A DNA stretch of 64,000 nucleotides from Magallana gigas (Eukaryota), in contig NC_088857.1 of assembly GCF_963853765.1 (NCBI RefSeq), forward strand, positions 14,570,001 to 14,634,000. Reading direction: 5' to 3'. Of this stretch, positions 24,809 to 27,800 are shown piece by piece (position 1 is the stretch's first letter; each line of letters starts with the position of its first letter). Below the pieces are notes generated by a model that was not told the DNA's origin, did not search any database, and was given only the letters and a program-made list of their open reading frames with translations. A program made the position numbers and the translations under genes.

Positions 24809-27800
24809 CTGAAAATAAAAGAAGGACATCCAGTCAGATAATAATATATTTATGTCTGCATGTTCTTTGTGACATATCAGCATTATTTGAAAATACATGT
24901 AAACAAACCTTATGAGACACACGAAATTTAAACACACTGCTGAAATATTTTCCAATGGGTATCTGCCACTGAAATCAAAGAAAAGTAATGTTCATAACTT
25001 ATTCTGAGGGAAAAATTATATCTTAAATAAAAGAGTCAACATACATACTTGAAGAAAAAAAGCAATATTCATTAAAAATTAAATATCATGCTAACTTGGG
25101 ATTGGGAAGGCCCGATACTAGAGATTGTTTTGTTTATTTTTTTTCAAATTGGTGTTCAATTTGAAAAGGTTAACAAAATTAAAAAAGTCCTTTAGATCTA
25201 TATACAAAAATGTATAAAACTATAAACAGTCCTTTTATGACCAGGTAAAGATCAGGATGCAAAAGGCTAATTATTTGGATGTAAGTATAGCTTCAGGGAC
25301 TAACCTGGTTTGGTATGCGTGCAATCAGTTCTCCGTCAACACTGGGGTTACAGTTCCTTGATGTGTGGTTATAACACAGGGTGGCAGAAGCCTGCTCCGA
25401 AGTTCTGTATTAATAAAAAAAATTTAAAAATAAGACATTTCAAAATTTATTATCATATATTTTTCTGATTTGTGAATTAATTTTCATTTGAAAACTTAAA
25501 AAAAAAAATGATTTGGGAAAACACTGATTACAGGATATATTAAAATACAGGTTAAAACCATTTCCTTCACCAGTAGAAAATAGCAATTGGGAGTGGAGAT
25601 AGCAGATAATAGAATGGTATGGATTACTCACAGAAACTGGAACGTGATCAGGTCGTATGAGAAGTACTGGCTGAGTTTGAGCCGGATCACCTTGCTTGTC
25701 TGGTTACAGCTGGTGCAGTGCTCCGCCCCGATCGTCACGTTGATCTCCTTGATGAAGATATTGGTGTGTAGGTCCTCTGCAAAGATAGAAAACACCATAA
25801 ATACATATAACCAGATACAAAGACCGAAAATCACCAGATATCAGAATTATGTACAACCAGATTCAAAGACCGAAAATCACCAGATATCAGAATTATGTAT
25901 AACCAGATACAAAGACCGAAAATCACCAGATATCAGAATTATGTACAACCAGATTCAAAGACCGAAAATCACCAGATATCAGAATTATGTACAACCAGAT
26001 TCAAAGACCGAAAATCACCAGATATCAGAATTATGTACAACCAGATGCAAAGACCGAAAATCACCAGATATCAGAATTATGTACAACCAGATGCAAAGAC
26101 CGAAAATCACCAGATGTCAGATTTTTGTACCACTCAGATACAAAGACAGCAAATGCACAGATAGATGATTTACTGTTCAAAATTGTAGCAGCTATATAAA
26201 GAGCTTGTTAGCTGCTATGATCTTGAATGCAGCCTGGGCTGTTAAATTGAATGCAGTCTGAGGCTGCATTTTGGACTAAATCTTAAATGTTTCAGTTTCA
26301 TGGATTTATTATTAACATGCAAAATATATTTAAACCAATTACACTGTATATCCAACAATTTTAATTACTGGTGCTTAATTTAAAACATTCAGTAGCTATA
26401 ACAATTGAGGTCCCGACTGGTTCACTCTTGTACACGGGGTCTGACTTACCCTGCGGTACACTTCGTCTGCGTCTGGCGTAGTGGATTTTCTTGATGGTGT
26501 TGGAGTCTATGTCCCCAGGGTACTGCGGCTGTTTGAAGTCTGGGAGTTCATTTGACTCATTGCCAAGCACGTTAACTTGGGGTCCCTCATTCTTAGATTT
26601 CAAGGTCTACAGGAAGAGACCAAAAAATTACAATCAGAAATCTTATTATAATATCAACATGTCTGAGAGATAATTGTAAATCACTGGCCCAGACACCATA
26701 AACTGAGAACAGACTTAGTCAAAAAATGAAATTTGAATTCTATTCATTGGAGTTGAAAATATTTAAAAGTTAAAACCCTTTGTATAGTATTCTGAGGTAT
26801 AAACTGACTGCAAAACTGAAATTTATACTTATTTTCAGTTTGTGATCATGATCGACACTGGTTTCAAGAGTCTGACTTACACTGATTATCGTCTCCAGGT
26901 TGCTCTCTGTTGTCGGTCTGGGGAGATTATTGGAGGGAGCTGGGGGTGTAACTACAAAATACAGACAGATTTCAGAAAATGTTCATTTAAAATGCAAATT
27001 GATAGTTAAATTAAGAAAAAAAGTATTGAATATTGCAGCGAAAAGTTAGATTGAATTGGAATATTATTCAAAATTTGAATTACATGAAATTAAAAACTAA
27101 ACATGTAACAATGAATAATAACATAAATTGTACAAGCATGTTATTATCATCAACACCAAGTCTTATTCATGCTCTATTACAAAGTCATTAATTCAAAATT
27201 ATTAGTCCTTTGTATTGATAAATTGATAAAAAAAGAATGAAAAGTTTTAAAAAGCAAATTATAATATCAAATAGGTATTACACAAACTTAGGTCCACTGT
27301 ATTATTATTATAGGGAGATACAGGTTTTTTAATCCAGGTCAATTTTTATTTAAAACATCACTTCTTGCATTAATCAGCACATCCTGGTCTCAATGCCAAA
27401 GATGGGGTATCACTTACGAGTCTGTACCTCCGGACCACTGATAACCATCGTACTGGTCACCACTTCCTCATCGAAGGGCAATGGTGGGGGGCAACAGTGC
27501 CGCTCACACAGCGAGGTCGTGGGGTCACAATAGGGGTACGGTGGAATTGTGGACCAAGCTAACAAAAAATAAACCATAACTGTCTGACTGTGTTATACTT
27601 ACAGATTTGGTACGTGGGGTTGATGGGTAGGGTTTGAGGCTCGTCCGATTGCTCAGGGGGTGGGCAACACTTTCGCTCGCAAAGCCGTGTGGTGAAGTCG
27701 CAGTAGGGGTATGGAGGAAGGAGGGTGCCTGGTTTGTCTGTTGTGAGAGGAAAAGGACAAGATATTGGTGATGCAGGAGTAAAAAAGCAATGGTTGAAGG

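What the first reader, a model, noticed from the sequence alone, without database searches (positions are those of the whole stretch)
27418..27737. Tandemly duplicated Cys-rich MYRF luminal exon separated by a 44-nt intron: candidate mutually exclusive exons
Seen: two adjacent minus-strand exons (135 and 141 nt, both phase 1-1, both with GTAAGT donors) encode paralogous modules, [23 protein letters not shown] and [23 protein letters not shown]. The spacer (27602-27559) is only 44 nt; it is not a multiple of 3, and read-through hits a stop. Established: a donor too close to the next branch point sterically enforces mutually exclusive splicing (alpha-tropomyosin and alpha-actinin cases). As I recall, vertebrate MYRF has one C..C...CC cluster in this luminal region, and the C-terminal fragment engages regulators (TMEM98 in mammals, PAN-1 in C. 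elegans). Inference: this animal may switch between two disulfide-knotted luminal modules, tuning MYRF trafficking or self-cleavage. Otherwise it splices an unusually short intron to make a two-module protein.
Basis: partly seen in the sequence, partly recalled or inferred. Interest (0 to 1): 0.8.

Follow-up and report, generated by a model that had tools for sequence, protein, structure and literature searches.

The report
Mutually exclusive twin exons in oyster MYRF
The oyster gene for the membrane-bound transcription factor MYRF carries two copies of the exon for its conserved cysteine-rich luminal motif, only 44 bases apart, and every transcript seen uses one copy or the other but never both; this is a new, well-conserved example of a known splicing device.

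Summary
Minus-strand exons A (27737-27603, 135 nt) and B (27558-27418, 141 nt) of Pacific oyster MYRF are paralogous (57% aa identity), both phase 1-1, and split by a 44-nt GT..AG spacer.

The mutually-exclusive reading is supported:
- RNA reads and contigs show A>C (2 contigs, 14 reads) and B>C (5 reads). No A>B junction reached the listing threshold.
- Four de novo 5.5-kb mRNA contigs read U-A-C-D.
- About 75 full-length oyster MYRF products, from RefSeq isoforms of six species and Logan transcripts, each carry A or B and never both.
- A is the major form. B is about a quarter of junction reads in one raw-read run.

Both exons are under strong purifying selection (dN/dS 0.03-0.14). Exon sizes are identical in Magallana, Crassostrea virginica and Ostrea. 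The spacer stays 40-45 nt while its sequence drifts.

All exon combinations keep the reading frame, so nonsense-mediated decay cannot enforce exclusivity. Steric interference from the short spacer is the best mechanism, but it is inferred, not shown.

Other animals, mammals included, have a single C..C..CC motif. AlphaFold places either core confidently; the exon tails are disordered.

This is a new member of a known kind. The functional difference between the isoforms is untested.

The parts
22524..50159 (-). MYRF-like gene, the part mapped by a de novo 5.5-kb mRNA contig: 21 exon blocks with a 2.3-kb last exon that includes the 3' UTR. The 5' end may lie further upstream.
   Evidence: blastn of Logan mRNA contig L008 against the window. 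Pfam NDT80_PhoG, Peptidase_S74, MYRF_ICA and MRF_C2 hit its product. RefSeq M. gigas MYRF-like isoforms match exactly.
30289..30374 (-). Exon U, the constitutive exon upstream of the pair. Its donor at 30289 joins either A or B.
   Evidence: Sequence. mRNA contigs L008-L011. Loose ends at 27740 in the reads carry the end of this exon.
27603..27737 (-). Exon A, 135 nt, phase 1-1, encoding ..[44 protein letters not shown]. It is the major alternative.
   Evidence: The A>C junction is in 2 RNA contig sets and 14 raw reads, in 4 full-length mRNA contigs, and in RefSeq M. gigas isoform X3 and all Logan full-length ORFs.
27559..27602 (-). 44-nt GT..AG spacer between A and B. Its excision was not seen. 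It holds the polypyrimidine tract and probably the branch site of exon B.
   Evidence: No 27603>27558 joint was listed. Its length is 40, 41 and 45 nt in three other oysters, with 43-61% sequence identity between genera. No stable fold (z = +1.04).
27577..27577 (-). Candidate branch adenosine for exon B (gttAtgg), 18 nt upstream of B's acceptor and 25 nt downstream of A's donor. Inferred only.
   Evidence: Sequence reading. A gttat motif recurs in L005 and L007. Not mapped experimentally.
27418..27558 (-). Exon B, 141 nt, phase 1-1, encoding ..[46 protein letters not shown]. It is the minor alternative.
   Evidence: The B>C junction is in 5 raw reads. U-B-C is exact in RefSeq M. gigas isoforms X1, X2, X4 and X5. 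B-only isoforms occur in six oyster species.
26881..26951 (-). Exon C, 71 nt, the common acceptor for both A and B.
   Evidence: Joints 27603>26951, 27418>26951 and 26881>26606.
26450..26606 (-). Exon D, 157 nt, the next constitutive exon.
27561..27561 (-). Polymorphism at position -3 of exon B's acceptor (tag>aag on the minus strand). It also removes the read-through stop codon.
   Evidence: 3 of 4 covering reads in X22. The allele appears in ORF cluster P0002, and aag also in P0203.

Best explanation
Exons A and B are a tandem-duplicated, homologous pair of mutually exclusive exons in oyster MYRF.

Shown:
- Each mature transcript or product seen carries exactly one of them, as U-A-C or U-B-C.
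- A is the major form and B a minority form, 4 of 16 junction reads in run X22 and 1 of 3 in X21.
- Both exons are conserved under purifying selection in Magallana, Crassostrea and Ostrea genomic sequence, and A-type and B-type isoforms also occur in Saccostrea.
- All four exon combinations keep the reading frame.

Inferred:
- Exclusivity is enforced at the splicing step by steric interference. The spacer is only 40-45 nt, so B's branch site and polypyrimidine tract lie about 15-27 nt from A's donor. U1 on A's donor and U2 on B's branch site then cannot form a productive spliceosome on the same spacer, and occupancy of one excludes the other.
- If A is defined, its donor pairs with C's acceptor and B is removed inside that intron.
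- If B's branch site is engaged first, U's donor pairs with B and A is removed inside that intron.

At the protein level the swap replaces the near-invariant luminal C-x6-C-x3-CC core with a near-equivalent core. The core differs at a few surface residues (F/P, R/S, K/H). The disordered tail that follows differs more: acidic and proline-rich in A, more hydrophobic in B. This probably changes how the luminal part of MYRF engages partners or is processed. That last step is speculation.
For: Junctions:
- A>C (27603>26951) is in contigs of two independent RNA studies (depth 3389 and 2171) and in 2+12 raw reads.
- B>C (27418>26951) is in 1+4 raw reads.
- No 27603>27558 joint was listed.
- An X1 contig ends its match at 27560 with 22 unmatched upstream letters. 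That fits U's end (...GCAG) joined to B, and does not fit A's end (...ATCT).

Transcripts and products:
- Four de novo 5.5-kb mRNA contigs from four runs read U-A-C-D.
- Of about 75 full-length oyster MYRF products, each has A or B and none has both or neither. They comprise RefSeq isoforms of M. gigas, C. angulata, C. virginica, O. edulis, S. echinata and S. cucullata, plus Logan ORFs, one of them seen on 92 contigs.
- The window's U-B-C-D-E translation is identical to RefSeq M. gigas X1, X2, X4 and X5.

Conservation:
- Exon sizes of 135 and 141 nt are identical in four oyster sequences. The spacer is 44, 45, 40 and 41 nt. Spacer identity between genera is 43-61%, against 73-84% for the exons.
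- Neighbouring introns vary widely: 274 vs 602 nt, and 2.9 kb vs 0.7 kb.
- dN/dS is 0.03-0.14 for both exons, and paralog synonymous sites are saturated.

Mechanism:
- All four exon combinations are in frame, so nonsense-mediated decay cannot be the enforcer.
- The other 20 introns of the gene are 97-8184 nt.
- The spacer has no stable fold and there are no docking/selector-like repeats.
- Steric interference and too-short intervening introns between 3n-long mutually exclusive exons are an established class (PMC4165533).
Against: - The branch point of exon B was not mapped.
- The oyster's minimum spliceable intron length is unknown. C. elegans excises introns of about 40 nt (PMC4165533), so 44 nt is not universally unspliceable.
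- Read laying lists a joint only from 3 reads or a contig, so up to 2 A>B reads per run could be hidden. With about 4 B>C reads in X22, missing an equally frequent A>B junction by chance has a probability of roughly 0.24 for that run alone.
- The U>B junction was not seen directly in my read table. It rests on RefSeq models and one contig's geometry.
- Steric interference does not explain why double skipping (U>C) is absent.
- RefSeq isoforms are computational models.
Confidence: 0.72

Rival explanations
1. The exons are used in a mutually exclusive pattern, but this comes from trans-acting regulators or competition in exon definition, for example a repressor of B where A is used. On this reading the short spacer is incidental, a leftover of the tandem duplication.
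For: Only A-or-B products are seen, which any strict regulation could produce. Double skipping is also absent, and steric interference does not explain that. B's acceptor region is T-rich and could bind a PTB-like repressor (inference). Introns of about 40 nt are spliceable in some animals (PMC4165533).
Against: The spacer length is held at 40-45 nt in four oyster lineages while its sequence falls to 43-61% identity and neighbouring introns change several-fold in length. That pattern is hard to explain if length does not matter. Every other intron of the gene is at least 97 nt.
Confidence: 0.18
2. The 44-nt spacer is a real, very short intron that is spliced in some tissue or stage, giving a two-module MYRF as a substantial isoform. 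On this reading the data examined simply missed it.
For: The spacer has canonical GT..AG ends with a strong GTAAGT donor and a T-rich tract. A+B inclusion keeps the frame. My read sample covered only four runs at low depth.
Against: No A>B joint appears in 2 contig sets and 2 raw-read runs in which both A>C and B>C are seen. None of about 75 full-length products from six species has both modules. Four de novo mRNAs lack B.
Confidence: 0.05
3. Exon B is a decaying duplicate whose occasional inclusion is splicing noise.
For: B is the minor form: 5 junction reads against 14, and no B-type full-length de novo contig. A common allele weakens its acceptor from tag to aag.
Against: B's dN/dS is 0.03-0.10 with saturated synonymous divergence between Ostrea and Crassostrea. 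Its 141-nt length, frame, splice sites and all four cysteines are intact in four lineages. B-type isoforms are modelled in six species. B resembles the single scallop module closely in its core.
Confidence: 0.04

Closest known systems
Mutually exclusive exons enforced by steric interference: alpha-tropomyosin exons 2/3 in mammals; egl-15 5A/5B, let-2 9/10, bet-2, gly-5 and gly-6 in C. elegans
   Same: This is an adjacent homologous exon pair of 3n length with the same phase. The intervening intron is too short to leave room between the upstream donor and the downstream branch site, and it is never seen excised. The description of the class was read in PMC4165533. The alpha-tropomyosin details are from my own knowledge.
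   Different: The spacer here is 40-45 nt. That is longer than the 14-30 nt worm examples and close to the worm's minimum intron size. Whether it is below the oyster's limit is not measured, and the branch point is unmapped.
Tandem exon duplication as a general source of mutually exclusive exons in animals (Letunic, Copley and Bork 2002, cited in PMC4165533)
   Same: The pair is a tandem duplicate with conserved length and frame. The paralogs have diverged (57% aa identity, saturated synonymous sites) while each ortholog set stays conserved.
   Different: None in kind. This case lies in a lophotrochozoan and in MYRF, for which I found no description.
MYRF luminal (non-cytoplasmic) region and its partners: PAN-1 in C. 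elegans, TMEM98 in mammals
   Same: The swapped module lies in the same non-cytoplasmic region, about 100 residues after the transmembrane helix and before the MRF_C2 domain. That region binds the PAN-1 LRR domain and is required for MYRF trafficking in the worm (PMC8099431). [quoted passage not shown]
   Different: No binding, trafficking or cleavage data exist for oyster MYRF. Neither paper mentions the cysteine cluster ('cysteine' occurs 0 times in PMC8099431). The mammalian splice variant mentioned there, lacking exon 19, is a skipped-exon variant and not a swapped pair.

Membership tests
MYRF (myelin regulatory factor) family | NDT80/PhoG DNA-binding domain plus Peptidase_S74 / MYRF_ICA self-cleaving domain | tested here: met
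   Pfam hits on window exons: NDT80_PhoG at 9.2e-16 and Peptidase_S74 at 3.2e-11. The full mRNA product carries NDT80_PhoG, Peptidase_S74, MYRF_ICA and MRF_C2.
MYRF (myelin regulatory factor) family | A single transmembrane helix followed by a luminal region ending in the MRF_C2 domain | tested here: met
   A hydrophobic 21-residue peak lies about 100 residues before the module in all homologues. MRF_C2 is present. The topology itself is taken from PMC8099431 and was not tested.
Homologous mutually exclusive exon pair | Adjacent exons of similar length, the same phase and recognisable homology | tested here: met
   135 and 141 nt, both phase 1-1, 57% aa identity.
Homologous mutually exclusive exon pair | Transcripts contain exactly one of the two, with no double inclusion and no double skipping | tested here: met
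   A>C and B>C joints are present and no A>B joint is listed. Four mRNA contigs have A only. About 75 full-length products each have A or B. Limits: low read depth, and trace double inclusion is not excluded.
Homologous mutually exclusive exon pair | Both alternatives are maintained by selection | tested here: met
   dN/dS is 0.03-0.14 for both exons across four oyster sequences. Exon lengths are identical.
Steric-interference class of mutually exclusive exons | The intervening intron, or the donor-to-branch-point distance, is below the minimum the spliceosome can use | tested here: inconclusive
   The spacer is 44 nt (40-45 in relatives), against 97 nt or more for the gene's 20 other introns. 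The candidate branch A lies 25 nt from the donor (sequence reading). The species' minimum intron size and the real branch point were not determined.
Steric-interference class of mutually exclusive exons | The intervening intron is never excised | tested here: met
   No skip-44 joint in four runs and no A+B product, within the depth available.
NMD-enforced mutually exclusive exons | Exon lengths are not multiples of 3, so double inclusion or double skipping shifts the frame | tested here: not met
   135 and 141 nt. U-A-B-C and U-C both translate without a stop.
U2/U12 spliceosome-incompatibility mutually exclusive exons | One flanking intron has U12-type signals (a /RTATCCTT donor) | tested here: not met
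   The donors of U, A and B are GTAAAC, GTAAGT and GTAAGT, and all acceptors are YAG with T-rich tracts.
Docking-site/selector (competing RNA structure) mutually exclusive exons | Conserved complementary sequences upstream of each alternative exon that pair with a docking site | tested here: not met
   The spacer region folds no better than shuffles (z = +1.04). The inverted-repeat scan of 26950-28960 gave only AT-rich or repeat-associated pairs. The search was limited to about 2 kb and one species.

The most novel reading that the evidence does not exclude
Oysters use the A/B switch as a regulated input to MYRF activation. On this reading the two luminal modules, with the same disulfide core but different surface residues and tails, bind luminal or extracellular partners differently, for example oyster counterparts of the LRR protein PAN-1 or of TMEM98. 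The exon choice would then set when or where MYRF leaves the ER, trimerises and self-cleaves, for instance at larval metamorphosis. It would be a natural isoform pair that pinpoints the otherwise uncharacterised, nearly invariant C-x-C-x-CC motif as a regulatory interface of MYRF in all animals.
Probability: 0.2. Interest if true: 0.6.

Novelty: new member of a known kind. Interest (0 to 1): 0.4.

Why it matters
For splicing biology, this is a clean lophotrochozoan example of a frame-neutral mutually exclusive exon pair. Its spacer length (40-45 nt) has been held across oyster genera while its sequence drifted. That makes it a natural test of the steric-interference rule outside vertebrates, flies and worms.

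For MYRF biology, it points to the near-invariant luminal cysteine motif, which has no assigned function. PMC8099431 calls the non-cytoplasmic region 'of unknown function'. A lineage has kept two alternative versions of this motif for a long time, which suggests it is an interaction or regulatory surface.

The isoforms are already present as computational RefSeq models. The advance is therefore in interpretation, not in finding a new gene product.

Tried and rejected
- The look-up of encoding contigs on the RefSeq proteins P0040, P0029 and P0055 found nothing on record, because only the longest product per gene is indexed. I used ORF fragments P0001, P0003 and P0004 to reach the genomic contigs instead.
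- The search for homologous proteins on the C-terminal region of scallop MYRF found only scallops, a limit of the word index. The conserved DNA-binding region worked.
- The search for homologous proteins with P0001, intended to catch short transcript fragments carrying an A-B junction, returned only 5 proteins. None had an A-B junction, so the sample is too small to count as evidence.
- Pfam has no model for the module itself: 0 hits for either exon peptide.
- A Foldseek search of the PDB with the luminal model gave only generic beta-sandwich matches at E > 0.01. It is not informative.
- Literature searches for oyster intron-size minima and for MYRF in oysters or molluscs found nothing usable.
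- The search of earlier findings returned nothing.
As a result the U>A and U>B junctions could only be seen as loose ends or contig geometry.
- The NMD, U12 and RNA-structure mechanisms were considered and rejected.
- I could not inspect the model coordinates, so no cysteine-pairing statement is made.

Full report
**What is in the sequence**

On the minus strand, exon A runs 27737-27603 (135 nt) and exon B runs 27558-27418 (141 nt). Each follows a pyrimidine-rich tract ending in AG and is followed by GTAAGT. The spacer between them, 27602-27559, is 44 nt and runs from GT to AG.

Both exons are phase 1-1. Reading through the spacer from A ends at the TAG formed by the last spacer bases (ORF 27559..27819). 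The peptides are 57% identical and share the core PPYPYCD.TT.LCER.CCPPP. The DNA alignment shows the homology ends at the exon borders. The 564-Mb genome holds only these two copies of the module.

**The gene**

Window exons hit Pfam NDT80_PhoG and Peptidase_S74. The translation U-B-C-D-E built from the window is identical to RefSeq 'myelin regulatory factor-like protein' isoforms X1, X2, X4 and X5 of Magallana gigas. The window is therefore Pacific oyster MYRF.

A de novo 5.5-kb mRNA contig maps to 21 exon blocks between 50159 and 22524. Its introns are 97 to 8184 nt long. The 44-nt spacer is less than half the length of the shortest real intron of the gene.

**RNA evidence**

I laid two RNA contig sets from different studies (X1, X4) and two raw poly(A) read runs (X21, X22) on 26300-28900.

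| Junction | Contigs | Raw reads |
|---|---|---|
| A>C (27603>26951, skips B) | X1 (depth 3389), X4 (depth 2171) | 2 + 12 |
| B>C (27418>26951) | none | 1 + 4 |
| C>D (26881>26606) | both | 6 + 9 |
| A>B (44-nt spacer excised) | none listed | none listed |

- Twenty-three X22 reads ending at the A acceptor carry the end of exon U as a loose end.
- One X1 contig (661 nt) matches from exon C through the B-C intron and exon B up to 27560, then has 22 unmatched letters. A match extending two bases past the B acceptor fits U's end (...GCAG) joined to B. It does not fit A's end (...ATCT).
- Depth over B is about a third of that over A in X22, above an intronic background of 1-6.
- Limits: a joint is listed only from three reads or a contig, so trace A>B splicing is not excluded. 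The U>B junction was not displayed directly.

**Transcript and protein catalogues**

A profile of the two peptides, searched against 1.8 billion representatives, found only oyster ORFs and scallop MYRF. Using scallop MYRF's conserved domains as bait, I retrieved oyster MYRF proteins and the members of their clusters.

About 75 full-length products were classified. They come from RefSeq isoforms of M. gigas, C. angulata, C. virginica, Ostrea edulis, Saccostrea echinata and S. cucullata, plus ORFs from Logan transcript assemblies. Every one has A or B. None has both and none has neither.

A-type RefSeq models include M. gigas X3, C. virginica X2, several O. edulis isoforms and most Saccostrea isoforms. 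All Logan full-length ORFs are A-type, and one exact sequence was seen on 92 contigs. Four full-length mRNA contigs from four different runs align to the window as U-A-C-D with B skipped. A is thus the major form and B the minor one in the data available.

**Conservation**

Genomic contigs from three other oysters were examined. L005's exon B peptide is identical to C. virginica MYRF. L006's is identical to O. edulis MYRF. L007 is another Crassostrea-like species.

- All three have exon A of 135 nt and exon B of 141 nt, with intact splice sites.
- Their spacers are 40, 41 and 45 nt.
- Between genera the exons are 73-84% identical, but the spacer only 43-61%.
- Neighbouring introns differ several-fold in length. 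The C-D intron is 274 vs 602 nt. The stretch from the exon before U to A is 2.9 kb vs 0.7 kb.
- dN/dS is 0.03-0.14 for A orthologues and 0.03-0.10 for B orthologues.
- Synonymous sites between the paralogs are saturated.

The duplication is therefore old, predating the Ostrea/Crassostrea split. Neither copy is decaying, and the spacer's length is conserved rather than its sequence.

**Mechanism**

All four combinations (U-A-C, U-B-C, U-A-B-C, U-C) stay in frame, so nonsense-mediated decay cannot remove double-inclusion products. All donors are U2-type. The spacer region folds no better than shuffled sequence (z = +1.04). An inverted-repeat scan found no docking/selector candidates.

That leaves the established steric-interference class. 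In it, the upstream exon's donor lies too close to the downstream exon's branch site for a spliceosome to assemble on the intervening intron. The class is described for mammals and for five C. elegans clusters of 3n-long exons (PMC4165533).

Here a candidate branch adenosine (gttAtgg, 27577) lies 18 nt from B's acceptor and 25 nt from A's donor. This step is inferred. The branch point was not mapped, I could not obtain the oyster's intron-size distribution, and worms do splice introns of about 40 nt. I put the mutually exclusive usage at about 0.9 and the steric explanation of it at about 0.65-0.7.

**Protein context**

A C-x(1-10)-C-x(2-5)-CC motif lies about 100 residues after the transmembrane helix. 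It is present once in scallops, clams, gastropods, a cephalopod, a chiton, an annelid, a brachiopod, chelicerates, a hemichordate, a starfish and mammals. In a 36-sequence alignment of luminal regions, its four cysteines and a following aspartate are invariant or nearly so.

AlphaFold models were made of the luminal part with A and with B. In both, the cysteine core has pLDDT 84-92 and the MRF_C2 beta-sandwich about 95. The rest of each alternative exon and the linker are disordered. The two isoforms therefore appear to keep the same core. They differ in a few core surface residues and in the tail: [17 protein letters not shown] in A and [21 protein letters not shown] in B.

In C. elegans the non-cytoplasmic region binds the PAN-1 LRR domain and is needed for trafficking (PMC8099431). 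In mammals the C-terminal part binds TMEM98, which blocks self-cleavage (PMC7153906). Whether the oyster isoforms differ in such interactions is untested.

**Novelty and verdict**

I found no paper linking MYRF with oysters or with mutually exclusive exons. The isoforms do already exist as RefSeq models, and the mechanism is a textbook one. This is a new, well-conserved member of a known kind.

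Noticed in passing
window 27826-27913: There is a 39-nt inverted repeat (92% complementary, 10-nt loop) about 90 nt upstream of exon A's acceptor. It is the only place in the laid stretch, apart from the repeat at 28649-28900, with substantial reads on both strands, and it has an 'opposite strands' joint at 27855. 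It may be a small palindromic mobile element or a hairpin RNA.
   Followed up: no
window 28649-28900: This stretch of the U-A intron has very high RNA depth: up to 21,000 in contigs and 128-240 in raw reads, against 2-30 on MYRF exons. There are many loose ends at 28647-28649 and 28700. It behaves like a repeat family transcribed from many other loci.
   Followed up: no
window 28976-29887 and 25809-26163: A 146-bp tandem repeat (5.9 copies), followed by a (GACG)n microsatellite, lies in the U-A intron. A 46-bp tandem repeat (7.7 copies) lies in the D-E intron. These generate the repeated pseudo-ORFs seen. The U-A interval is much shorter in the C. virginica-like contig.
   Followed up: partly
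window 27561: A polymorphism changes exon B's acceptor from tag to aag on the minus strand and removes the read-through stop. It is seen in 3 of 4 X22 reads and in ORF clusters P0002 and P0203. It could act as an allele-specific modifier of B usage.
   Followed up: partly
L007:626-946: In another Crassostrea-like oyster the spacer is 45 nt and has no stop codon. A, the spacer and B therefore form one continuous ORF (P0001). Retention of the spacer would be in frame there. No evidence that this happens.
   Followed up: no
window 46882-47056 and upstream of 50159: The de novo mRNA contigs (1073-aa product) use a 107-nt block at 46988-46882, where the RefSeq X1/X3 proteins match 47056-46883. The first 209 nt of the contig do not map with the rest. 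This indicates alternative 5' exons or acceptors in the N-terminal region, independent of the A/B choice.
   Followed up: no
window 30305 region (exon U): A coding polymorphism, AAAACAAAGG vs AAAACACAGG (Lys vs Gln), occurs in exon U. It differs between the window and the reads or older C. gigas and C. angulata models.
   Followed up: no
window 2600-18100, plus strand: A second multi-exon gene converges on MYRF. Its ORF fragments read like coiled-coil plus SAM-domain protein (for example [31 protein letters not shown]), reminiscent of liprin-alpha. This is recognised from memory only and was not tested.
   Followed up: no
P0011 (Mytilus edulis X3), P0027 (Dreissena X2): These two bivalve MYRF isoforms show no C..C..CC motif under the pattern used. 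Either the motif is lost or diverged in those lineages, or those isoforms skip the exon.
   Followed up: no
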